Below the pieces are notes generated by a model, which worked only from the letters and a program-made list of their open reading frames with translations, did not search any database and had not been told where the DNA came from. Source: Dimorphilus gyrociliatus (Eukaryota > Animalia > Annelida). Taken from it: DNA of 64,000 nucleotides. Positions 1,552 to 60,932 of the stretch are shown here, piece after piece. A program made the translations under genes and the position numbers. The stretch is taken from NCBI GenBank assembly GCA_904063045.1, contig CAJFCJ010000012.1:1860001-1924000 (forward strand). Direction: 5' to 3'. How positions within the stretch are numbered: the stretch's first letter is position 1; the number at the start of each line of letters is the position of its first letter.

Positions 1552-4500
1552 TTATTTTATTGAGAATGGAGATGATACCGTTGGAGAGATAGGAACAGAG
1601 GAGGAGGTGGACGAAGAAGAAAAGGGAAATGTAGAGGATAAAATATTACTACTATTTATTATTTCTTTTACATCTGTTTTCGTATTCGAAACCCTTTTTT
1701 GTTGCATTCTTTTAATGATTATTCTATTTACCAAACAAAATATAATAGAAGAGGTAAACAAACATCCAAAGATTGTTAATTGTCCCAATAGACTTATTTT
1801 CATCTCTTTTCTTCTATTTCGATATTCGAAATCGTCTCCGAAACAATTATAATGAGGTTTTGAAGGTTTTGGATTATTGCATTTTCTAGTTCGAAAGCTC
1901 TTCCCTTTAATGTTTGAATCGAAATTCCAGTTAGACCAGCTACTCCATTCTCCAATAAGCGGTCTCCAGCAAAGTGTTTGATGCTTCTCCTCGCAATCGG
2001 CTCCTTGCCATTGTATTTCTTTTTCTTCGATCATGGCCAAGTAACAATCACCTTCTAAACTACTCACAACTTTCTCATCTACTACGTCAGTATCGTTCCA
2101 AACGAAAGAGTCCCATACAAAAGTTCTTTCGGGTCCTTTCATCTTACGTATACCTAACCAAAGAGTCATGTTTTTAAAAGCATTACGAAGAAATCTGACC
2201 AGATTTGAAGCTTTTTGAACATTTGATAATTTAAATAGATGCAAACCGAGATTCTGACAATATTGAACACCTTCCTCATAAGTTAAATATCCTCCGTATG
2301 ACAAACAATAACCGCTTAATTCGTCATAATAAAAGATTGGTAATTGACAAACGTTGGACGTAAAAATACAACGCTTATCAGTCAATCTGTAAAGTCTTTC
2401 TAAACTGCTAGATTTCGATTTCAAAAAAGAACAAAACGATGTTGATTTAACACATTTATATCTTTTATCTTCTATCTTTAGTGAATAAACTTCCCTACAA
2501 AGTTTATCTTGTAAGCACCAATTGATACAGAGTTCAAATGATATCATATTTTCAACGCTATGCTGTATTGTTGGAATACTTAGAAATTTATTCAAGCTAA
2601 CTTCTGAATCATCTCTTTGAGTAGCAATCATAGATTGGCAAATATCCTTAGTTCTTAGGTGACCATAAAATTCAATTTCAACTGCCATATGAACACTATT
2701 CGGACTTGTAAATTGCCAGCAACGTCGAACTTGTCTCTCTTCTAAGCTTTGCGTACCGCAGGGACTCTCTAAAAACTCTTCAGCAGGTCCAGGATCGTTA
2801 CACTTTCTTGTTCTATATTGTTTAATATTCGTAACAGACTTAAAGTAGCAAGGACAGTCGGACCATTTTGTCCAAGGGGACCAACCACCTCTCAGAGGAC
2901 GTTGGCAAATTGCTGTTAACTTGGAGAAATTGCATAGGATTTCATTTTTTAATGGCAATCTTCTCCGATTTAAACCAAACATATCCTTCAGATCAACGGT
3001 TCGATAGCTTACGTATAAAGCGATACAATTCGATAGAGGAATGTCAGATATGTTTAAGCCTTTTAATTGATTATTATCCAAGAGTTCATATCGTTTTCCA
3101 TCGCCAAAATTAGAGTTATAATGAAGTCGATAATCGATTAGTTTTGTTGACATCCATACAGTTTCTTTTGAAGGGAAGAGCGTTTTTACAGATTCAGATA
3201 ACAAATCCGGTCTAAACATATTCATTTCTATACTCTGACAATATTTAGTAGCCTCTCTATATGTAACATTCCTTTTAATAACAAAACAAACTTTCGTTAA
3301 TGCGTCGTACAAGACGTTGTCAATGGGAACGGTAGAAAATTTTGAACATATATCATGAGTTTTTACATAAAGCCAATGCCCAGCTGGAATATATGTATAG
3401 GCATAATTAGGATCAGTATCGCAATATCTTTCGGTCAAACCGCAATAACCAATAAGTTTATCATCTTTCATAGGAATATATAAAAATCCAACATAGGTTT
3501 GAGAGTCGGAACAGATTTTCCTACATTCGAAAAATGTCTTACCAACAATGTACTTTCTTGCGGTAGGATCATTACCATTCTCGTACGGAATTATTCTCTC
3601 TGTAGAGACAGAGGAGCTATTCCGTTTAGTAAAACTACCGAAATGAAATCGAAAGAGATGTGTAGGACCACAAATATCCCATAGAGCTGGTCTAAAGAAT
3701 TTAAATGAATATTTAATAGAAGGCAAAGATTGAAGGACCATATCTGGTCTTGGAAGTCTGTCAAATATCCTACACCATAGTTTTAATGTAAGAGGAGGTT
3801 GCGTACAAGAACTATCACTCTTAATCTTAAGGAAAGGTATTTCTAAAATATGTCTTGGATATATATTTTCATATAAATCAATAATCGAATGATTGATTTC
3901 TAAGCCCAAGTGATCATCTTTAAAAGTAATTGTGGGTTGTAAGTCTGCATTGAGCCATAAATAATCAAGTCCAAATGTAGCACATAATCCTTTCATTAAA
4001 TATTTCCTTCTTTCTTGAGCTAAAGCTTTAATGTTATTGATATTTATACATAAAGGTTTAAGCAAACCATTCCATCTCATATAAAGAAATCCACAACGGG
4101 AATTTCCGCTATTAATTTCAATTTGATCAATAAAACCAAATATATTGACTGTTGCTTTAATATGATCACAATCGTGATTAGTAAATGTTCTCATTATAAG
4201 AAAGCCATCAAACGATTCTAAATCTTTTATTGAGCTTGTTCTACTTGAATAGTTGATCTTACTTGAACCAAAATTAACGATATCTGTATATCTAGCCAAA
4301 CTTTTAAATTGGGGAAAACAATAGCTCTGATCGACATGATTAAATTTAAGATTGCAATAATGATATCTAAAGGGTAATTTATATTTAGAAGAAGGAGTTT
4401 GTATAAACTAATAAAAACTAACTTAAAATGGATAGCCTTATCATTATCTCCTATGTAAGGTGGATTAGGTTTTTTAAGCATTTCTTTTATCAGCCACTTT

Positions 4501-5954
4501 TGACTTTCAGTTATATTCCAACCATCTTTCGGTTTATAACAAATGGTTGTTAATCTACTCTTACAATTAATCTTTTCCCTATCCATTAGTAAGTAATTCT
4601 TATTATATCTAATCAATGCAGAATTACAATCTTCTCGTAGACTTTTTAAAGGATAGAACTTTGATTTAACTTTTAATAATTTATCTCTTGATTGAAAAAC
4701 GTTACGCCAATAGAAACCTCCATCTTTTTTTATTATAGGTAACCATATTCTCTCTCCTTTAGTAGAGAAAAACGTTTTTACCATATTTGGCAAATATTCA
4801 TTATTCTCTGTAACCTTTAGAATTGCCATTCCTCTATTTGAACATTCTTTTTCGGCTTCTTCCCAATTGAATTTATCCTTCAAGATTGTATAACAGTACG
4901 AAGGTTTAAAATAGTTTTCAAAATACATCTCATTTGCATAAAGCCTATTTGAACATCTTTGGGATGTTCTAACATATAAATTTTGTCCAGGTCTTAGATA
5001 AACCATCTTGTTAGATTGAACATTTTCGCATTGTTTATTAGTAAGATGACAAATTGAGCCAGATTTTAATGGGAAAAAACCGAAGGCAACGCAATCTCTG
5101 CTATTTAAACATTCGTCCGCGCAATTGTCAACCGTTTGAGAAGAAATAGAAGTTTTCGAATTGTTCCATTGTAAATTTGCTTCATTTATTAAATGAAGTG
5201 GTCCACAAAGGTGATAATTATCTTTTCCTGGTCGATATAGTATAAATATTACATGCATTTTAACAATCTTTAAAGGAGGGAAATAGGTTGTATTCTTCGA
5301 ATTGCATTTAACTAGCAGAGGTTGTTTACAAACTTTACTAGAACTTTCTAAAGCATTGGCTTCGAATAGGTGAGATAAGATAACATCATCGAATATCTTG
5401 CTAGATATTAAATCGTTTGTATGTTTTGTAGAGGATAAAAAAACTGATGGAAATTCTTTAAACAACCTTTCATACTTCCGGTCAACTGTATCGTGCATAA
5501 CTTCTGATTCCATATGAACACTTCGACATATTGCTTTTGAAACGACCCAAACTTTCGTATAGGCTTGATATTCTTTTAAAATATTTTTATTGTCAAGACA
5601 AACTAATCCGAATTGCTTGTTAAAGCGAACTAAACCAATACCGCAAATCATTTTTACTCCGCAATTATCCGTTTGAATTTCCCTAAGATAAACTCTACCA
5701 TCAATTGATTCATAGCCAGTCTCGTTGACTAAAACCAAGCCATACTGAGAATTTGTACCCTCAACCTTTCTTACAGTTCTAAAGGGAGGAAAGTAATAAT
5801 TTAAAGATTTTCCATAATGCCAACAATTAGTTATTGATCTGTTACAAGTTATCTTTGGAGAATTTAGAGTATTTTTTTTTGAATCTAATGTCAGAAATAG
5901 AAGAAATATAATTGAGAAAAAGCTAATTGAATGTAAAATGTTACATTTACACAT
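1552..5954 (-). CDS. About 1448-aa type I membrane mosaic protein: signal peptide, three PAN/Apple-like plus C-type-lectin-like modules, two TSP1 repeats, TM helix, Ser-rich tail; one 56-nt intron (4367-4422)
   Basis: ORFs 4227-5954 and 1552-4299 join in frame through a GTTAGT...CTTTAG intron (exons 1532+2815 nt = 1449 codons). Motifs: WSPWTKWSDC..RTRKC and WSSWSNW..RTRKC (TSP1), YEEGVQYC..LWLG..C (CTLD), CADECLNSRDCVAF (PAN), and a C-terminal hydrophobic segment. Confidence 0.85.
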
Positions 5955-9349: not shown

Positions 9350-9742
9350 TTACTTAAGAGCTGACCAGCTTCCTATACTTTCCGGGTCTTTTAATTGTTT
9401 ACTCATTAAGGCTTCACCTTCTTTTTCCATTCGGTTTATGATGAAATTACTTGCATCAATGAAACGGTTGACGCAATTCGTTAGACACGTCTCAGTTTTC
9501 TTTTCTAATCTATTCGACGGTGTTCCCATACATGCATCCCAACAATGGTCTGTTAGTGAGTGAACGATTTCTTGAAATTTTTGACGTTGGGTCTCCGTTT
9601 CAACAAAACGTTTCAGTTGTGGATCAGATGCCTAAATAATTCATAACTACATTATCGTTCATAAGAAAGTCTACATTTTAGTTTTCAGTAATCATTTAAG
9701 AGTCATTAAATTAAGTAATAAAAAATTTGTTAAATTTACCAT
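9350..9742 (-). CDS. TIMM8: Mitochondrial intermembrane-space chaperone Tim8 (twin CX3C); exon 1 is ATG only, exon 2 is 9350-9631
   Basis: M|ASDPQLKRFVETETQRQKFQEIVHSLTDHCWDACMGTPSNRLEKKTETCLTNCVNRFIDASNFIINRME. Not in the ORF track. Confidence 0.95.
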
Positions 9743-10228
9743 TTTTCAAATCGTATAAATTTTACTGTGTATTTTTTTACTTATGATTTCAAAGAAAAGT
9801 ACGCCTGAAGTCAAACCACAGACTTTTGAGCGATACTAAATAACAAAATTATTTACCAGTTTATATAAAAAGTTTTGAATTATATCCCAATAAGATATCA
9901 AATTTCTTTATAAGCCACTTCATTTATTATACCATAAAGAATAGAAAAACAATTGTCCTACATGTCAAAATTTGTTTCCAAGTTTTGTAAAAAAAAAACA
10001 CATTTTATTTTTCACATTCTGTATCTTTCTGGTGAAGACAGCGTTGTCACAAAATTTACAAAGCACAATTAAATAAATCTTTGGAAGAAAATCTACAGAA
10101 GTTATTTTTTTTCAAAAATACAAATTGCAATAGTAAGTAGACGCCTTCTTATCTAATAGAAAATATACTAAGTACAAAGTATGTCAGAAAGTAATCAAAG
10201 CACCGTCAAACAAGAAAGTTTAAAGGCA

Positions 10229-12593
10229 TTAAATATGAACCCGATTTGGAATATGCTGAGGATCGAGATACGGATAAGAATATTTTAATGTCGGGTTTTC
10301 TTTCCTTTTCTGCTCTCTTAACTTGCTTGCTTCGCTTAATTGAGCCAAATCTTGCTGAAATTCTTTTACAGCTTGGATACACATAGGCTCGTAATGAGCG
10401 TGATCCTCTCCTAATGATCTTGCTTCGGTATTGCTGATTAATTTGGTTAAAGCTGCAGTCTCACATGTGACTTGTTTGGATGGTATGAAAGAGCATAATT
10501 CATCTTCTGTTATAGGTTGCTTAGTTCTTGGTGGTGAGCCCTTTAACAGCAGGGGATAACTGGGAGGGAATGCACAGTGATCATACAATGGCAGAGAGGT
10601 TGCTGCATGAACACCCGTACACGTCCATATAATACCAGTTGCTATTTTAATGATTTCATCCTGAGTTTTTACAGAAGGCGGAAGCCCATTCACTCCGATT
10701 CCTCCAAATGACCTCTCTCTAGCCAATTCGCCAATAAATTGTTGAAGCTCGTAATCTTTTATAACTGAGTCCATGTCCTTGTAATAAATTTTAATTACCT
10801 TTGTTACATAAGAATTCATCACTTTGTGTAGTGGTATAGCCTCATCCCTGTAAGAGTAGTTTGGTAGAACATTCAGATCAAGAAGACCTCGTTGTTCCAA
10901 TTCTCGCGGTACACAGCCCTAGAAAAGAAACCAGAATACAAATTTAATTCTATGTTCGTTGGTAAAAATATTTTAATTATAAATTACTTGAATGTCCAAG
11001 CACCAAGCCTCCGCTGCCCTTATGCATAGCTCTAAAGTTCCCTTTCTCCCTACTGAAAGATTTCTCTCTGCCCAGCCTGACTCTGAGAGCAATTCATTGA
11101 CAACTCGCCTGTTCAAAGAAGGTATATGAGCTAGATGAGGATATAGTAGTCTATGAAGAGGATGAGATGGTGCTAGATGGCGTTGTAAGGCCACAGAAAT
11201 TCCTTCCATCATCATGTGTGTAATACCAAATCTCCATAGACAAAAGCTTAATGTTGCATCAGCATGATTAAACCACATCTTTGCAGCTATCCAAGTCAAC
11301 TTCGGATCGGAGGGAAAGAAAACGGGCCCATCTCTTTCTAGTTGAATCGCAATGGGTTGGAGCTTTTTATCTCCAGAAACGAAGAACAAACCAATAGCCG
11401 CATCACACAGATGTCTTCCGGGAACTGTGGTAACACCTTCCAACAAATGAGAATGATCAACGAAGAACAATCTTCTAGCCTGTATGATCTGTTTCACTGA
11501 CCATCCTTCCAGGAAAGGCTTAAGCATATCATGAGTAACTGGTAGTCGATCAGGAAGAGAATGACATAAACAGATACTAGTCGGCAAACACCCTGCTAAG
11601 CGTTGGGCGCCGAAGCAACAATCGCTAGACCAATCAGACTTACAAGCTGGAGTTGGAAGACCTCCAGGACCATCAAATAATTGAACAACTTCATCAAAAC
11701 CGGCAAACGATGTGGAAGTTGTTCTCGCTAATCCATATTGTGCAAGAAGTTCTGTTTTTCTTCTTATCAGATCCCAAAACGGAGCAAGTTCCGAACTAGT
11801 ATCGATAACGTCCCTCTGTTGTAGGGGCGCATGGGCCACCAATTGAGCATATTGATGTGAAGATCTGTTATCATAAGGTATGATTTGTATATTTATTTAT
11901 CAGCCCGATAAATTATAAACATTTTAATGATACAATTTCTATAAAAAGTAATTTGTCTTATAAAAAACATGCTATTGAAGATAACAAATCAGTTATAATA
12001 ACGTTCTAAAATTTTTAACTTGTTTTCCTCGTTTAAAACTGATAATAAAAAGTTTCGAAATTGTCGTAAAGACGTTATTTTATTGTTTCAAGCTGACCTA
12101 CCGATTTTCTATTAGCTCCGCTTCTCTTAATTTGGCATGAGCGTCATTCTGAGGTAAGCTAGTGTCGTTTCTTTTCACTCGTATCCTTCTTCCTGCCTTT
12201 AACCAACGACCAATAGGAAAATGTGTTATAAGGCCTTTCGCCCTACTATGAACTGTAATAACATCGCATAGCCAATCAGCGTCCGAGTCATTTGGGTCTC
12301 TCCAGATTTCCAACTCTGTAACCGATGACAATTGGTCCCATGATTCCGCTTGAAAGACGTCAGTATGCCCAGGTTGCGGATCCATAACTTCTACTGGTAT
12401 CTCGTCAACATGAATACCTGTATGAAAAAGCTGTTTATCAATCTGAAACTTTCTTTTGCATGACTATCAGACCCATATTGTCATAGGCAATCATTCGCAA
12501 TCTGACATTCGTAGCCGACGGTCTGGCATCTCCTGTCCTTATATAAATCCAATAATTTACGGCTCCTTTTACCGCGCAACAGTTATTCCCCAT
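10229..12593 (-). CDS. Lipoxygenase-family protein (PLAT + LOX domain), 667 aa, with degenerate iron ligands; exons 12473-12593, 12102-12417, 10988-11864, 10229-10918
   Basis: PLAT motifs (YWIYIRTGD, WLCDVITV, FPIGRWL), FGAQRLAG, LQPIAIQL, AKMWFN, HPLHRLLYPH, YSYRD, C-terminal PNRVHI. Exon phases sum to 668 codons. Confidence 0.93.
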
Positions 12594-12949
12594 CTTTCAC
12601 AGGTACATTTATCAGATTAATCACCGCCCTTATCACCTGGATCAACCTGAGTCACGTGACAATATAAAAAAAACTGGTATACTTGAAACTAACAGCCTCT
12701 TTTATTTCCGTTTCTTTGAATATTTAAAAATATTGAAGTCTTATTGTCTGTACTTGTTACTAATTCCGTTGTTTCTGTTTGTTTTTATCAATCTTATATG
12801 TTTATTAAGGGAAAAATAATAACTTGAATATCTGGAGTAGATTATGACAGACTGTACAGCATGATAAATAATATGTATTGCTTGTCAAACTAAAAAGTTT
12901 ACAATTGAAAGAGTTATCGATATATATATATTGTTTTTATACAGTGAGT

Positions 12950-14253
12950 TTACTTAAGTTTGTATTTATTATTATATTTTTCCATTAGAGATTTTATCTT
13001 TGGAAGTGAATTGTCTATAATAGAGTTCCTGTCAACACTCTTTAATGGACATCTAACAGGACCTAGGTTAATATCCAGAAAGAAACTTGTAAAAGTTTTT
13101 AAAGATGTAATACCACGCCCTATAGATAAAATATATAGTTAATATATCTCTATACTACTAGAAGAATACTTGTATAAATTACCATTTTCAAAGATAATCT
13201 CTAAAAATTCCTGAGCAAAAGTTTGAATTTCAAGAGCCTTTTTAAGATTTCCATCTTCGAATGAACTGATTAATTCCGTGTAGACGTTCCCTGTTTCGCG
13301 TGTTATTTTGTAAGATCTGAATGATATATTAATACAAGTAGATTGTTATTATTCTTACCAATATAGTTATAAGTTGAACCAATAGCTGCATCTATCCCAA
13401 ATACCATGGCTCCTAACAATTGTTCGTCCATACCGTAGAGAATGTTATATTTTCCATTATCAATCATTCTACACAAATTTATTTCAGACAAGTTCCAATG
13501 ACTATATTTCAAACCCCGAAGATTAGGTATTCTCTTTGCAGCTGTCCATAGAAACTCTTTCATGCATACTAAGTTTAAAACGGAAAAGAAACATAGATGA
13601 TAGGGATTGATAAATTATCAGATTATTTACATTGGATATTCGTTCTCATAGGAATATGATAATAGTAGAAAGGAATGTTAGGGGCTTCACTCGCTACTCT
13701 TGAACAGTAGTCAATCAAATCGTCTAGAACGATTTGAATATTTTCCTATTTAATTAAAGTGCAATAGATACAGACCAATTGTTTCTGGTTTAAAGTAGGT
13801 CGGTGCCATAGCTGAAATGGCGTCAACATGCTTTTCATTACAAAATCTCGCTAATCTACAAGCATCTTTTACGGACTCGGCGCCGACATGAATTATTACA
13901 TTTTCTAAATTATTTTTCTCCTTAACATTCATCCAATGTTCACTTAATTTGTTCCTCTCTTCAACACTTAGGGAAAGACCTTCTCCAGTAGAACCATTAA
14001 CTATTAAAGTTTACTTAATTAGAAATAAGTTAATTCTATTATCTAAAACTTTACCAAACACGTTTTTAACGTTGATACTACTCAATTTTTCAGCATATTT
14101 ATCAATTATCCCATAATTGACATACCTACAATTAAATTTATTACATATACTTTGTTAGCAAAAGTACAAAAGTAATGATTAATAAACGTACTGATTATCG
14201 TCAAAGGGCGTAAAAACAGCTGCTACTAAACCCTTTATTCTATAATTACTCAT
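12950..14253 (-). CDS. NPL: N-acetylneuraminate lyase (DHDPS family), multi-exon
   Basis: MSNYRIKGLVAAVFTPFD, VNGSTGEGLS, YYHIP, LRGLKYS (Schiff-base Lys), GMDEQLLGA, AAIGSTYNY, LGPVRCPL. Confidence 0.93.
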
Positions 14254-55372: not shown

Positions 55373-56533
55373 TTATGTATGGCTCGTCCTTGAAATTTCA
55401 TTAACAGTTTCACTAACAGTTTCACTAACAGGTTCCTTGGTCTTTGAACGCGATATGTTCTTCTGTTTATTGTATTTCTGATTGATCCTTTTTAGATCCT
55501 TATTAGATAGCGTTGCTAGACCTTTTTCTTCGTCAAATATGCTCATATCGAAACTGTGCCTATTCATAAGAGCTGTTTCAACAAGATTTCCATTTACCCG
55601 TTCCTCCCTTTTAAACTTTTTCTTGAGTTCTTCTCTCGACCTACCTGGAAATAGTTTTGTTAGAGACGTAAAATCAGTTCCAAGGGTTTTGAGCCCCAAA
55701 TAAAAAGTTGCTGTATCCCGTACTGTCCATGGTCCTGAGAAACTCTGTTTCTTGAAACTTCTACTAGAGACAAATTCATCTTTATTGCCGTCAGTTAAAG
55801 GCATTGATTTGAAATCAAACTTCTTTTTTTCCCTAACAACTAAAGACTCTTCATCAATGACGATTTCACCTTTCTCATCTATTCTAATTTGAGGCGCACT
55901 GGAGCTGCTCTCCTCTGTCAAATCTTCCTCTACAGCGGGTTTATCTGGCTTCTCATCGAATTCTTGTACAACTTCACTGTCATCTTTGGGCATTGGATTC
56001 GTTGTAGGGTTTAAATAAATTAAATCACTAATTTTCATTGAAGATTCCACTGGTGTATGCAAATATTCAGTTTTTCTCGTTAATTTTTTCGATACCATAG
56101 GGCGGACAGATTTAGTCAAGTCTTTCTTCGTTAAGATTGGTAATTCGTCGTCATAAGACTTGCGTCGATTCTTCTCACTTTTGTTTGTTTTCTTTTTGTC
56201 TTTTTTGACTTTGTCATGAGATGAATGGGAACCCGCTTGTTTTCTTTTTTGTGCACGTGGCTTGGGTGTATCAGTCACTTTCGAGTCGGACTTGGATGCT
56301 TCTTTTGCTCCCAAGTCAGAAATTTCTACTATCTCTTCAGCAGCAATATTAGACGGATAATCAGTGGCAGTATTTACTGACTCAATAGCTTTATTTTCTT
56401 CACTTACTTCGGTTTCTGAGATGATTTTACTTTCAACACTCTTCTCATCTTCAACAGTCACTTCAGTATTTTGCGTAGTTTCATCTTTCTTAATCGTCAC
56501 ATTAGGCTTGAAGCGAATTTTTGGTCGACGCAT
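55373..56533 (-). CDS. BDP1: TFIIIB B'' subunit BDP1-like, intronless, about 386 aa
   Basis: N-terminal RRPKIRFKPNV, IDEKGEIVIDEESL, SANT-like WTVRDTATFYLGLKTLGTDFTSLTKLFPGRSREELKKKFKREER. Confidence 0.88.
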   Translation of the reverse strand: MRRPKIRFKPNVTIKKDETTQNTEVTVEDEKSVESKIISETEVSEENKAIESVNTATDYPSNIAAEEIVEISDLGAKEASKSDSKVTDTPKPRAQKRKQAGSHSSHDKVKKDKKKTNKSEKNRRKSYDDELPILTKKDLTKSVRPMVSKKLTRKTEYLHTPVESSMKISDLIYLNPTTNPMPKDDSEVVQEFDEKPDKPAVEEDLTEESSSSAPQIRIDEKGEIVIDEESLVVREKKKFDFKSMPLTDGNKDEFVSSRSFKKQSFSGPWTVRDTATFYLGLKTLGTDFTSLTKLFPGRSREELKKKFKREERVNGNLVETALMNRHSFDMSIFDEEKGLATLSNKDLKRINQKYNKQKNISRSKTKEPVSETVSETVNEISRTSHT

Positions 56534-56661
56534 GGCTGACCTCCACTCGTAAATAACGAGTAAGACTGAAAATCTTATTGCAATAGGCGATGATGTAAAT
56601 GTTGTGAAGCCTGAAGCGGAAACGGAAATAACATGCACCGTGAGAACAAATTCGCGCGAAA

Positions 56662-56696
56662 AGCGCCATCTAAGGCTCCTAACAAAGCGCATGCGC
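56662..56696. promoter_or_regulatory. Promoter motif cluster: CTCF/YY1-like GCGCCATCTAAGG and NRF1 palindrome GCGCATGCGC
   Basis: Motifs at 56662-56676 and 56687-56696, between the divergent BDP1 and 57158 genes. Confidence 0.5.
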
Positions 56697-57157
56697 CATA
56701 CATATTCGGTTTTTATTTGCTCAGGTTCTTTTATAACAAATTCAGGTAATTTACTTTATTTTATCGAAAAAAGAAACTACTAAGTAAGACTAAATTCATT
56801 TTTTATTATTAAAGCCTAAAAACTTATCGTGATTTCGATAAATTTTGACGCTTTTCAAGCATATTTCTCGGCAAGCTGTTCGCTTAACCGGCGTCGTTAT
56901 GGAAATTTTTATGTAAATTAAGCACTAGTATATTAACCATATCTCTATATTCTTTTGCTGCCATTTTCTGTTAATTTTCTTCCTGATTTTAGTAATGTAG
57001 AATTTATTTCATTTTACAACATTTTGGCGCCAGAACTTAAGAATTCAGAGTCAAGGTCATTTAGGCCTGATTCTACGCGCTTCTTTAGAACTCGGAAAAA
57101 TCGAACTTTAAGTTTAATTCCATCTAGTTAAAGTACTATTTAATATTCAGGCAAGCC

Positions 57158-57773
57158 ATGCTACCACTTTCAAAGTCAAACGAGTCAACTCAGGAAGATG
57201 TCGACATGAAGGACAACAGCCTTGTAAACAATAATCGAAATGGATTTTCAACTCCAGTAACTTTTCAAAACGGTTGTAGTAATCCTTTCACGCAGATTTC
57301 TCGTAAAAGGTCACTATGTGATCAAAGTGTTTTCATGGATCTGTCAAAAAAAGCAAAAGTGAGCGAAACATCAAACGGTTCGTAAATAATTATTCTATCA
57401 TTGTTATTTCTTTTGATACAAACACCGGTGTTGGGAATTTTCTTTTTTTTTAAATCGTTTTAAGCTATTTCCGCTTATGGCATTTTCAGATGATAATCCT
57501 TCAAATCCGCAAACTTGTCTCGAGATTTCAAATTATCTTACGTCAACTGTCAAAACACCAACACCTATTTGTTTTGTCGCGAAAGACGGTTTTTGGATGA
57601 ACTATTGGTGATTGACCGTTTCTTGTTTCACAGGATCGTCGTTCAACTTAGGAAATCCAGAAAAAAATTTCCCTTGTACCTCGTTAATTGAGCATCAATG
57701 TAGCATCAATGCGCAAATTGGTTATGCTAACACTTACTGCGACGTTTTAATTGCAGATTATCACTCTGGTTGA
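57158..57773 (+). CDS. Small uncharacterised protein with NLS-like RKRS..KKAK; 3' exon structure ambiguous
   Basis: Exon 1 (57158-57377) splices in phase to an exon from 57490. The frame hits TGA at 57609-57611 and then stays open to 57773. Confidence 0.5.
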
Positions 57774-58021
57774 TGTGAAAATAGCTAGATTATTTTGTTA
57801 TATAATGTTTGTTATGTCTCGTCTCTACACCTGTATATTTCTGGTATGTTCACTGCCCGTTAGTTTTTGGACTCTTTTACGTCTATTGATTTCAATGAAA
57901 CTAGTATGAGTGGAAAATTTATTTTTTATAAATATGATTACAATATAGAAAAATACGAAACAAAAATAGAACAGTTTGATATTTCAAATAACGAATACCT
58001 TCCATTATCAAAGGCTCGTTC

Positions 58022-60932
58022 TTACGACAGACGCGAACGTAGACATCGTATGATTTTCTTTTTCCTCTGTGGAACGTTGTTCAGTTCATTGAGTTTTGCT
58101 TTCATTTTAGAGGATGTTTCATTTAATTGAGTAGAAAAAGAAGTGATTGGGGCTCTACTTCCTTCAACAAGAGTAGTACTTTTCTTCTGCGGTGTTGATG
58201 CTGAGTGAGCGCAATACGGCGATGGTGGGCTTTTACAACGTAATCTCTCTGATCGTCTATTCTCATCTTCGTCACTGAGACGCTCCTTTGCTTCTTTCTC
58301 ACAAATTCTTGGCTTCTTATAACCATCGTAGTTAGTTAAACGAGAATTATAATCAGATTCAGGGGGAGCATAGCCTCTCTTTCGTCCCTTAAAAGGAACT
58401 CTGTTAATTAGAGATGGCCGGTCTGTTGATCTACTTCTGAGGTTTTTGCTTGATAAAGAATCCGTTGTTGATCTTTGATCTAAAGAAACACTTTTAGGCC
58501 TTAACGCATTATCAGAAGTTTTACTTTCATCCTCCTTATTAACAGATTTGACAACTTTTTCAGATTTTTTCCCACTTTCAGATGGTGTCTTGGCTAATTT
58601 AATACGAAGAGTTCTGGTTTCATTTATGGTTTTTAAAGCGCTCACAGAATTTGAAGAATTTTCATTTTCATTATAGCAGCTATCGCCTGCTTCGAGTTTA
58701 ACTTTACTCTTCACTTGATTTCGTTGAGACAATCGTTGAAATACAGTTGGTTTTCTCTTTTTTAACAACTTTTGAGCTCCAAATTTTAATTTTTTTGCTT
58801 TTCTTTCTACTTCACTAATTATTTTAGATGATCGACCACGCTTTTGTTTTAAATCGTTCACTTTTGAGGTCTTATCAGTAAGTTCGGTTTCATTTTTCAC
58901 TATTTGCTTTTTAGAATTTGGCTTAAACTTTGGTGTAGTTGCTGAATCGGGAATTTTTAATGTTCGAAATGGGCGTTTGTCATCCGAAAATGATTTTCGC
59001 TCATGTTGTTCTATAACTACACCATTTTTATTGACTTTGTTGGTAATAATTTGCGAATCATGATAGCCGTATCGTTGTTGAAAGGCGTCACTTTCCAATA
59101 TGGCAGTTCGAGCCTTCACTGAATCATGATCATCATAAATCGGTGCAACTCTATGCGCTCTTATTACTTGCGGCTTTTCTCTACTGGTTAAGCTGGTATT
59201 TTCGAGCATTTCTGCTTGTTTGTGAATGATTAATTTTTTAACATTAGCCAACTTTTTACTATGTTTTTCTCTCCTCGTTACAAGATAACATAAATTCCTG
59301 ACCCTTTCTAAATTTTGGCGAAGTTTTATAAACATTGCCAATCTTCTGTTGAGAAGGTCATTTTCAGCTTCCGTTAAGGAGTCGTCGGTTTTAGGATGCA
59401 ATAAAGGTTTATCAAAAAAAGATTTTCTTTTTAACGTCCAGTAGACGTGAACATTTTCAACAATCTCAACTTTTTCCTTCAATGTACATGCTACGTCGGC
59501 GGCGTTGACCAGAGTATAAAATTCTTCTTTTAGTCTTTCAATTTTAGTGTTTCTATTCTCCTGACAAAAATCAATGGTTACATCATCGTCGTCATCATTG
59601 TCAGTGGTCAAATCTGATTTGTTTTTAGAATGTTTGGGGCAATAACTTAGGTAATTAATAGTTCCTTTTGAGGACGGAGTACAATTCATAGTTAAACCAC
59701 TTCTTTGAGCACATGTTACATGGTATGCTTTAACGCAACTTTTTATTGAACATTGGATACAAGCTCCTTTCTTCCTTTTGCAAATACAACAAGCTAAATT
59801 TCTTCTAGACTGAGGTATGCTTTGGATGTGTTTGATTGGTTCCATTAAATCACTGGTATTCTCAATAGCTATCTCAGGTATCCATATAGCACAAGATAAA
59901 TGCGCCCACTGTAATCCTGACCGGGTTGATTTCAAAGCACCACCGGTATTTGGACACAAGACGCATTCTTTCTTAACACCCAAAGCACAGGGCCTGCAAT
60001 AATAAGGTCCATCTGGTATTCTCTGAATTCCATAACAACCTTGATGAACACATACATCACACCCATCGCAAAATACAATCTCATTATTATCCTCAGCGTC
60101 AGGACTTCTACAAACATCACAAACGACATTTTCGTCGTATTCGATACCTAGACCAGCTCCTGTTTTTTCACGCATTTGCATATTTTCATGACACTTATCT
60201 TCAAAGCATTCTATAATGCGCTCCATTTGCCGTGCACCAAGTGTTTCAATGCCAGATGATGTTCTCCCTCGATTAAAAATCTCGAGCCAGCTAATGTCCA
60301 TTAGATCCAAATCGTAACGGCATAAGGATTCACCGATTTTATCGTAATTGCTTAATTTATGCTCTTTCTCGTCATAAGTTTCATCTTTTGTTTGATGGAT
60401 GTATTTTTTAGATCTAAAAATGTGCATATAAATTAGCATTTAATAATTTATAACATCTAAAACTTTACCGAACGAAGCGAACATTATTATCATTGAGATT
60501 GGTTACTTTGACTACTTTTGGACAACTGTCGAAATCTGGATTAACAGGGACTTGAACACCAGCCTCCCATTCTTGTTTCCAGGGATCATTAATTATGATA
60601 ATATCTTCTAGGGGTAAATGTTCACTATCAGGTACTTTCATAGCAGATATTAAATCTTTTCGGAACAGCTGTAGAGATGTATGAAAAAAAATATATTTCA
60701 TATTTTAATGCAATATAATTGCTAACCTCTGCCGGTTTTTGACTACTCCTTCCACGTAACCTTAATGCAGACCGACCGTTTAAACTCTGCCTTAATTCAG
60801 GAGATTTAAGCGATGAGCTTGCTGTAGGTATGTCATTATTAATAAGGGATGCATAATTTGGTGACAAAAGGCGTTACCTCGACGCAAGTGTTCTCTACCG
60901 CTTGGGGCAGTTTCTTCATCAACATCTTCCAT
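58022..60932 (-). CDS. JADE: Jade/rhinoceros-family PZP (PHD-Zn knuckle-PHD) chromatin adaptor
   Basis: KPAELFRKDLISAMKVPDS..DPWKQEWEAGVQVPV (EPC-N), CDVCRSPDAEDNNEIVFCDGCDVCVHQGCYG, LRQNLERVRNLCYLVTRREK. Confidence 0.92.

What the first reader, a model, noticed from the sequence alone, without database searches (positions are those of the whole stretch)
10229..12593. Lipid-anchored lipoxygenase that has lost an iron ligand (candidate pseudoenzyme or altered-chemistry LOX)
The conserved HxxxxHxxxxH helix (5-LOX HQTITHLLRTH) reads SFCLWRFGITH here. The first His is Ser and the iron-ligand His367 equivalent is Arg (AGA at 11231-11233). HAAVNFGQ reads HAATSLPL: the His is kept, Asn becomes Ser (tolerated in some LOXs) and the conserved Gln is lost. 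The C-terminal Ile ligand is kept (PNRVHI). The 667-codon frame is intact, so this looks like a maintained gene rather than a pseudogene. The N-terminus MGNNCC predicts myristoylation plus palmitoylation, which I do not know from typical animal LOXs. Inference: a membrane-tethered lipid-binding scaffold or regulator, or an enzyme with modified chemistry by loose analogy to eLOX3.
Basis: partly seen in the sequence, partly recalled or inferred. Interest (0 to 1): 0.7.

Follow-up and report, generated by a model that had tools for sequence, protein, structure and literature searches.

The report
Conserved lipoxygenase with remodelled iron site
A tiny marine worm (Dimorphilus gyrociliatus) expresses and strictly conserves its copy of the annelid lipoxygenase, although an iron-holding histidine is replaced by arginine and neighbouring residues are rebuilt, so it probably no longer works as a normal lipid-oxidising enzyme.

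Summary
A four-exon minus-strand gene (12593..10229) encodes a 667-residue PLAT + lipoxygenase (LOX) protein.

- **Iron site:** the position of human 5-LOX ligand His367 is Arg (AGA, 11233..11231) and Asn554 is Ser. His372, His550 and the C-terminal Ile are kept.
- **Not an assembly error:** spliced RNA contigs from two further studies carry the same codon and confirm all three introns.
- **Conserved:** a related species (Logan run SRR23372228) keeps Arg with a synonymous codon (AGG). Its whole protein is under strong purifying selection (pN 0.09, pS 0.74, saturated).
- **Constraint is highest at the altered site:** the rebuilt iron helix opens the longest identical block between the two species (63 residues).
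- **More than one change:** second-sphere Gln363 and Gln557 are also replaced. The usual C-terminal tail PN[SA]ISI reads PNRVHI.
- **Origin:** the gene is the dinophilid member of the canonical annelid LOX clade and sits on a long stem branch.
- **Lipid anchor is not special:** about half of canonical invertebrate LOXs start with MG, and annelids start MGNCC.
- **Recurrent loss:** ligand-lost LOXs occur at about five separate places in the tree (flatworms, arachnids, others).
- **Annotation:** the public model DgyrCDS9005 fuses three genes and hides both protein ends.
- **Earlier finding:** this scan already reported a dead AOS-LOX fusion elsewhere in this genome.

Whether the protein is iron-free or has altered chemistry remains untested.

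The parts
12473..12593 (-). Exon A: start codon, N-terminal extension and first PLAT strand (its last base is the first base of a split Gly codon)
   Evidence: In-frame TGA two codons upstream of the ATG. The joint 12473/12417 is seen in RNA contigs. The first 28 residues are identical in the L001 orthologue.
12576..12593 (-). MGNNCC: N-myristoylation-type motif (Gly2, Cys6 fits PROSITE PS00008) plus Cys5/Cys6 as candidate palmitoylation sites
   Evidence: Identical in L001. Canonical annelid LOXs read MGNCC.
12418..12472 (-). Intron 1, 55 nt, GT..AG
   Evidence: Skipped in spliced contigs of X2, X3 and X5.
12102..12417 (-). Exon B: remainder of the PLAT domain and the linker
   Evidence: Pfam PF01477, E 1.6e-5. 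80% amino-acid identity to L001.
11865..12101 (-). Intron 2, 237 nt, GT..AG
10988..11864 (-). Exon C: N-terminal half of the LOX catalytic domain
   Evidence: Pfam PF00305, E 9.5e-20. PDB 11R-LOX and 5-LOX at E about 1e-27. 90% amino-acid identity to L001.
11216..11248 (-). Remodelled iron helix SFCLWRFGITH (canonical HQxLTHLGFTH)
   Evidence: It opens the longest identical run (63 aa) between the two species.
11231..11233 (-). AGA = Arg at the position of iron ligand His367 of human 5-LOX
   Evidence: The L001 orthologue has AGG.
10919..10987 (-). Intron 3, 69 nt, GT..AG
10229..10918 (-). Exon D: C-terminal half of the LOX domain, including the stop codon
   Evidence: Pfam PF00305, E 8e-16. 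PDB 8R-LOX at E 6e-26.
10586..10609 (-). HAATSLPL: His550 equivalent kept, Asn554 to Ser, Gln557 to Leu
   Evidence: Identical in L001.
10232..10243 (-). C-terminal tail RVHI. The Ile whose carboxylate binds iron in LOXs is kept. Positions -4, -3 and -2 are changed from the canonical [SA]-I-S
   Evidence: among 140 canonical tails, Arg at -4 and His at -2 never occur. Identical in L001.
12594..12682 (-). Conserved 89-nt leader/promoter block directly upstream of the ATG. It holds the palindrome GTCACGTGAC (12660..12651) and a 3-codon in-frame uORF (12608..12597)
   Evidence: about 92% identical to L001, while four-fold coding sites are only 38% identical.

Best explanation
This is the Dimorphilus gyrociliatus orthologue of the canonical annelid lipoxygenase, a subfamily that carries an N-terminal acyl-anchor motif. 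In the dinophilid lineage its metal centre was rebuilt: His367 to Arg, Asn554 to Ser, second-sphere Gln363 to Phe and Gln557 to Leu, and the tail from SISI to RVHI. The protein was then frozen under strong purifying selection. I think it most likely no longer holds a redox-active iron or performs canonical fatty-acid dioxygenation. It would keep the LOX fold and hydrophobic channel and act at a membrane as a non-catalytic lipid-binding or regulatory protein. The Arg guanidinium (and possibly the new tail Arg and His) would occupy or neutralise the former iron site next to the C-terminal carboxylate. Shown here: the gene structure, expression, the substitutions, their conservation, orthology, and a confident LOX fold. 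Inferred: loss of iron and activity, lipid binding, acylation and membrane location.
For: 1. The substitutions sit at ligand and second-sphere positions in ungapped alignments.
2. The ligand set His367/His372/His550/Asn554/Ile673 is stated for 5-LOX in PMC5113960.
3. The gene is expressed and spliced in runs from two studies other than the source, with an identical codon.
4. The orthologue L001 keeps every derived state. Over 663 codons pN is 0.092 and pS is 0.741, and the Arg codon differs synonymously, AGA versus AGG.
5. The remodelled helix starts the longest invariant block, 63 aa. The site is therefore constrained, not relaxed.
6. The window deviates at 9 of 53 near-invariant LOX columns (canonical median 1, 95th percentile 7). 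Four of the nine lie at the metal centre and seven are identical in L001.
7. The tail residues Arg(-4) and His(-2) are never seen in 140 canonical tails.
8. The gene is nested in the annelid LOX clade (SH-aLRT 100) on a stem of 1.27 substitutions per site, against 0.36-0.55 for the other annelids measured from the same node.
9. The AlphaFold model has pLDDT 89.5 and pTM 0.91, with TM 0.89 to Stable-5-LOX.
Against: 1. No biochemical test was possible.
2. Three of the five protein ligands remain (His372, His550, C-terminal Ile). Two His plus one carboxylate is enough to bind iron in other non-heme iron oxygenases.
3. The new His next to the C-terminus could act as a substitute ligand.
4. Strong constraint on the site fits a working but altered catalytic centre equally well.
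5. The fold used the public protein fragment, which lacks the first 19 and the last 3 residues. No coordinates were available, so the position of the Arg side chain is unknown.
6. Only two species carry this form, so the age of the change is poorly bounded.
7. The long stem branch could partly reflect a lineage-wide rate; no control gene was analysed.
Confidence: 0.6

Rival explanations
1. The protein still binds a metal through a changed ligand set: the His372 and His550 equivalents, the C-terminal carboxylate, Ser554 and perhaps the new penultimate His. Arg would then be a second-sphere residue. The protein would catalyse altered chemistry, such as hydroperoxide isomerase/epoxyalcohol synthase, lyase or peroxidase-type reactions, rather than canonical dioxygenation.
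For: Three ligands are retained and invariant in both species. The metal-site region is the most conserved part of the protein. The tail gained a His never seen in canonical LOXs. The fold and most near-invariant columns are kept, 44 of 53.
Against: A positively charged Arg at a first-sphere position should disfavour a cation. Both second-sphere glutamines are replaced by hydrophobic residues. From my own recollection of the 5-LOX mutagenesis cited as refs 31-32 in PMC5113960, mutants at this histidine are inactive. No known LOX works with such a ligand set.
Confidence: 0.28
2. The protein is an ordinary active dioxygenase despite the substitution.
For: The overall LOX architecture and C-terminal Ile are intact. 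Ser at the Asn554 position is, to my knowledge, tolerated in some mammalian LOXs.
Against: The His367 column is His in all 160 canonical representatives examined. Five hallmark positions are changed together. The tail is also changed.
Confidence: 0.07
3. The finding is an artefact or a decaying pseudogene: an assembly error at the codon, or an unexpressed relic.
For: The raw genomic stretch contains stops, and the public gene model is a three-gene chimera.
Against: The spliced mRNA contigs are identical in three runs from two studies. The reading frame is intact in two species with saturated synonymous divergence and pN/pS about 0.12. The Arg codon differs synonymously between the species.
Confidence: 0.02

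Closest known systems
Canonical annelid / lophotrochozoan PLAT-LOX (e.g. Capitella teleta CAPTEDRAFT_172669, Helobdella robusta HELRODRAFT_66521, Owenia, Ridgeia)
   Same: Same clade, same length and architecture. 40-47% identity. Same N-terminal MGNCC..GAV signature.
   Different: These keep HQxLTH..TH, HAAxNFxQ and PN[SA]ISI. The window protein has SFCLWR..TH, HAATSLPL and PNRVHI, and sits on a stem 2.4-3.6 times longer.
Human 5-lipoxygenase (PDB 3O8Y / 3V98)
   Same: Best structural match (TM 0.89). The His372, His550 and C-terminal Ile equivalents are present.
   Different: About 24% identity. His367 is Arg, Asn554 is Ser, and Gln363 and Gln557 are lost. 5-LOX has no N-terminal MG-Cys extension.
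Non-catalytic human 5-LO isoforms Delta4 and Delta13 (PMC5113960)
   Same: These are LOX-fold proteins without iron or activity that are proposed to act as regulators.
   Different: They are splice variants of an active gene that keep the ligand residues. Here a dedicated gene carries fixed ligand substitutions.
Carbonic anhydrase-related proteins CARP VIII/X/XI (PMC2873310)
   Same: Highly conserved non-enzymes that arose from a metalloenzyme by loss of metal-binding His residues. By my recollection, CARP VIII has His to Arg.
   Different: Unrelated fold and a different metal (zinc). This is an analogy of mechanism only.
Epidermal lipoxygenase-3 (eLOX3)
   Same: A LOX-family member that does not act as a normal dioxygenase.
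   Different: From my own knowledge, eLOX3 keeps the iron ligands and uses iron for hydroperoxide isomerase chemistry. The ligand loss seen here has no counterpart in it.
Doubly dead AOS-LOX fusion of the same genome (earlier finding s1-080456)
   Same: Same organism. It is a second expressed, conserved LOX homologue without a full ligand set.
   Different: According to that note it is a different gene and architecture (AOS fusion) from an older lineage that has lost all ligands. The present gene is a recent derivative of the canonical annelid LOX and keeps three ligands.

Membership tests
Lipoxygenase family (PLAT + PF00305 architecture) | N-terminal PLAT/LH2 beta-barrel | tested here: met
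   PF01477, E 1.6e-5, on exon B. Beta strands at residues 10-103 of the model.
Lipoxygenase family (PLAT + PF00305 architecture) | Sequence match to the lipoxygenase catalytic domain | tested here: met
   PF00305 on exons C and D. PDB LOXs at E 1e-26 to 1e-27.
Lipoxygenase family (PLAT + PF00305 architecture) | LOX three-dimensional fold | tested here: met
   AlphaFold pLDDT 89.5, pTM 0.91. Foldseek TM 0.89 to Stable-5-LOX.
Catalytically competent iron lipoxygenase | Complete iron ligand set (5-LOX His367, His372, His550, Asn554 or His, C-terminal Ile carboxylate) | tested here: not met
   Arg at His367 and Ser at Asn554. His372, His550 and Ile are kept. The ligand list is from PMC5113960.
Catalytically competent iron lipoxygenase | Conserved second-sphere glutamines (5-LOX Gln363, Gln557) | tested here: not met
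   Phe and Leu here, the same in L001. Gln557 is 97% conserved among the canonical set.
Catalytically competent iron lipoxygenase | Iron content and dioxygenase activity | not testable with these tools
   Needs recombinant protein, ICP-MS and a 234-nm assay.
Pseudoenzyme (conserved non-catalytic homologue of an enzyme) | Catalytic residue lost while the gene is expressed and under purifying selection | tested here: met
Pseudoenzyme (conserved non-catalytic homologue of an enzyme) | Demonstrated absence of catalytic activity | not testable with these tools
   No assay was possible.
N-myristoylated / S-palmitoylated membrane-anchored proteins | Met-Gly start fitting G-{EDRKHPFYW}-x(2)-[STAGCN]-{P}, with nearby Cys | tested here: met
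   MGNNCCA fits and is conserved in L001. The first ATG follows an in-frame stop in the mRNA contig.
N-myristoylated / S-palmitoylated membrane-anchored proteins | Actual lipid attachment | not testable with these tools
   Needs metabolic labelling or click chemistry with G2A and C5S/C6S mutants.
eLOX3-type hydroperoxide isomerase | Retains the full iron ligand set (my own knowledge of the family) | tested here: not met
   The His367 equivalent is Arg.

The most novel reading that the evidence does not exclude
Dinophilid annelids converted their only canonical lipoxygenase into an iron-free, membrane-anchored lipid-binding protein in which an arginine side chain stands in for the metal. Together with the dead AOS-LOX fusion, the worm would then have no catalytic LOX at all. 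This would be one case of a recurrent, undescribed class of LOX pseudoenzymes that arose about five times among invertebrates (flatworms, arachnids, others), most of them keeping the N-terminal myristoylation motif.
Probability: 0.35. Interest if true: 0.7.

Novelty: new variant of a known kind. Interest (0 to 1): 0.55.

Why it matters
- **No described precedent found.** Lipoxygenases are treated as obligate iron dioxygenases. I found no paper describing a conserved LOX pseudoenzyme: searches returned nothing relevant.
- **A clean natural experiment.** This is a recent, well-rooted conversion of a canonical enzyme. The metal centre was rebuilt and then held under stronger constraint than the rest of the protein. 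That points to a non-canonical function of the LOX fold that can be tested directly: iron content, lipid binding, and back-mutation.
- **Two wider points for comparative oxylipin biology.** A probable dual-acylation motif is ancestral to a large invertebrate LOX subfamily. Ligand-lost LOXs recur in several phyla and are all annotated simply as '5-lipoxygenase-like'.
- **An annotation error.** The public model of this gene is a three-gene chimera that hides exactly the two ends that matter.

Tried and rejected
- **Frameshift in exon A.** The first frame hits a stop at about 12440. I considered a homopolymer indel and a 34-nt intron. I rejected both, because RNA contigs show a clean 55-nt GT..AG intron.
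- **Assembly error or pseudogene.** Rejected.
- **Lipid anchor as a special feature of this protein.** Rejected. It is ancestral and common in the subfamily.
- **A nearby His compensating for the lost ligand.** I considered the His in FNHADA. Several canonical LOXs have the same NH, and it lies about 11 residues away on the helix, so I did not pursue it.
- **All ligand-lost LOXs as one old clade.** The AU test rejects this (p 0.0004). Caveats: the group was defined after the tree had been seen, and long branches are involved.
- **Word search with exon C**. The length filter hid full-length relatives, so I used the exhaustive search and a profile headed by a full-length relative.
- **Full-length protein record.** None was found for this gene in the collections. 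The fold and tree used residues 313-956 of the public chimera P0166. That fragment lacks the first 19 and the last 3 residues, so the metal-site geometry with the C-terminal carboxylate could not be modelled.
- **Literature searches.** I searched for LOX pseudoenzymes, acylated invertebrate LOXs and the run SRR23372228. Nothing relevant came back.
- **The species behind L001** could not be named.

Full report
**Gene model and observation**

The stretch 10229-12593 is not one open frame. On the minus strand it reads as four exons:
- Exon A, 12593..12473, contains the start codon.
- Exon B, 12417..12102, encodes most of the PLAT domain.
- Exon C, 11864..10988, encodes the first half of the LOX domain.
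- Exon D, 10918..10229, encodes the second half of the LOX domain and the stop codon.

Pfam finds PLAT on exon B and Lipoxygenase on exons C and D. The closest solved structures are 11R-LOX, 5-LOX, 15-LOX-2 and coral 8R-LOX, at E about 1e-26.

In ungapped alignments the canonical helix H-Q-x-x-T-H-L-x-x-T-H reads S-F-C-L-W-R-F-G-I-T-H. In 5-LOX numbering this gives:
- His362 is Ser.
- Gln363 is Phe.
- The ligand His367 is Arg (AGA, 11233..11231).
- The ligand His372 is kept.

In the second motif, His550 is kept, Asn554 is Ser and Gln557 is Leu. The C-terminal Ile is kept. The 5-LOX ligand set is His367, His372, His550, Asn554 and Ile673, as stated in PMC5113960.

**Is the sequence real, and is the gene expressed?**

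Public runs hold the gene. Three runs other than the likely source each hold a single spliced contig that skips exactly the three modelled introns and shows no other difference from the window. These are X2 and X3 from one study and X5 from a second study under another organism label. They therefore carry the Arg codon.

These contigs are mRNA. They confirm the 55-nt intron that rescues the frame, and they show that the ATG at 12593 is preceded by an in-frame TGA. A coral metatranscriptome (X6) holds 99%-identical pieces, including the Arg codon. Its six variants are four synonymous changes, one Ala-to-Ser and one Met-to-Ile. Assembly error and a silent pseudogene are excluded.

**Organism and annotation**

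A profile search returned DgyrCDS9005 of Dimorphilus gyrociliatus, 1050 aa. Its three parts map at 100% identity to three places in the window:
- 14253..12953 holds a DHDPS/N-acetylneuraminate-lyase-like gene.
- 12542..10238 holds the LOX.
- 9631..9353 holds a Tim10-family gene.

The window is therefore D. gyrociliatus. The public model is a three-gene chimera that omits the LOX's first 19 residues (including MGNNCC) and its last three (VHI).

**Orthologue and selection**

A Logan assembly of run SRR23372228 (locus L001, species not named by the tools) carries the same four-exon gene with the Tim10 gene downstream.

Over 663 aligned codons, pN is 0.092 and pS is 0.741. Four-fold sites are only 38% identical, which is near saturation. 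dN/dS is therefore far below 0.1.

Every derived state is shared between the two species: MGNNCC, FCLWRFGITH, HAATSLPL and PNRVHI. The Arg codon differs synonymously (AGA versus AGG).

The longest identical run between the two proteins is 63 residues, and it begins exactly at the remodelled helix. The first 28 residues are also invariant. The altered centre is the most constrained part of the protein, not a relaxed one.

**Relatives**

The exhaustive search with exon C found 1578 relatives. The nearest full-length ones are canonical: Helobdella at 47% identity and Tubulanus at 44%.

In a maximum-likelihood tree, the window and L001 form a pair (support 100) inside the annelid LOX clade (support 100), together with Capitella, Helobdella, Ridgeia and unnamed Logan annelid-like sequences. 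The pair sits on a stem of 1.27 substitutions per site. The other annelids lie 0.36-0.55 from the same node. No control gene was analysed for lineage-wide rate.

The shared N-terminal signature, MGNNCCAVKGAVN here versus MGNCC[VA]V[EK]GAVD in annelids, was not part of the window's row in that tree. It supports the placement independently.

**Extent of remodelling**

Among 53 alignment columns that are at least 93% conserved in 160 canonical representatives, the window differs at 9. The canonical median is 1 and the 95th percentile is 7. Four of the nine are at the metal centre, and seven are identical in L001.

The canonical tail is P-N-[SA]-I-S-I. Arg at position -4 and His at -2, as found here, occur in none of 140 canonical tails.

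The public fragment (residues 313-956 of P0166) folds with pLDDT 89.5 and pTM 0.91. It matches Stable-5-LOX at TM 0.89. The scaffold is therefore intact.

**The lipid-anchor motif**

Of 168 canonical full-length invertebrate LOX representatives, 81 start with MG. Of these, 56 fit the PROSITE myristoylation pattern and 43 also have Cys at residues 3-8. They include annelids, molluscs, echinoderms, hemichordates and cnidarians. The motif is ancestral to this subfamily and is not linked to the ligand loss.

I found no paper describing the motif. A 2025 paper (PMC12463027) links the KRAS/ABHD17C axis to human ALOX15B. I did not read it.

**Other ligand-lost LOXs**

Several other representatives also lack ligand histidines:
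- flatworms: Heterobilharzia and Macrostomum;
- arachnids: Centruroides and Ornithodoros;
- several unnamed sequences;
- Ridgeia, in which His372 is Asn.

On the tree, loss of the first ligand needs at least five changes of state. An AU test rejects a single clade containing all the ligand-lost sequences (p 0.0004). The group was named after the tree had been seen.

This scan had already reported a dead AOS-LOX fusion elsewhere in this genome (s1-080456). I did not re-test it.

**Interpretation**

Shown here:
- The gene is a maintained, expressed orthologue of a canonical enzyme.
- Its first-sphere, second-sphere and tail residues around the iron were replaced together.
- Those replacements have since been conserved.

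Inferred:
- Canonical iron-dependent dioxygenation is lost.
- The protein acts as a membrane-anchored lipid-binding or regulatory protein, with the Arg occupying or neutralising the former metal site.

The main rival is retained metal binding through His372, His550, the carboxylate and perhaps the new tail His, with altered chemistry. This cannot be excluded without biochemistry or a full-length structure.

The exons were always searched separately by reference. The joined 667-residue model was never built, searched or folded.

Noticed in passing
window 9353-14253, minus strand: The public protein DgyrCDS9005 (1050 aa) merges three separate genes: a DHDPS/N-acetylneuraminate-lyase-like gene, the LOX, and a Tim10-family gene. 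RNA contigs show that the LOX has its own 5' leader, start and stop.
   Followed up: yes
window 12594-12682, minus strand: The 89 nt directly upstream of the ATG are about 92% identical to the L001 orthologue, although synonymous sites are saturated. The block holds a perfect palindrome GTCACGTGAC (12660..12651), an E-box of the CLEAR/TFEB-MITF type; in L001 it reads ATCACGTGAC. It also holds a conserved in-frame 3-codon uORF (12608..12597). It may be a promoter or leader element.
   Followed up: partly
proteins P0006-P0282: About half of canonical invertebrate LOX representatives start with MG, often followed by Cys (annelids, molluscs, echinoderms, hemichordates, Nematostella, Acropora). This is a probable ancestral dual-acylation anchor. 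I could not find it described in the literature.
   Followed up: partly
proteins P0015, P0017, P0018, P0022, P0019, P0036, P0037, P0052, P0066, P0179: LOX homologues lacking one or more iron-ligand histidines occur in flatworms, scorpions, ticks and others, at about five separate places in the tree. Most keep an MG start. Ridgeia piscesae has His372 replaced by Asn. All are annotated simply as lipoxygenase-like.
   Followed up: partly
run X6 laid on window 10441-12241: A coral metatranscriptome holds 99%-identical pieces of this worm's gene, one of them across intron 2. DNA or pre-mRNA of D. gyrociliatus, or a very close strain, was therefore present in that coral sample.
   Followed up: no
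window 1552-5954, minus strand: Two long overlapping-end ORFs (915 and 575 aa) each carry a weak C-type lectin domain.
   Followed up: partly
window 55373-60439, minus strand: A long ORF at 55373-56692 encodes a Myb-like DNA-binding protein. A second at 58022-60439 encodes a PHD/zf-HC5HC2H (JADE/BRPF-like) protein. Both look like ordinary host genes.
   Followed up: partly
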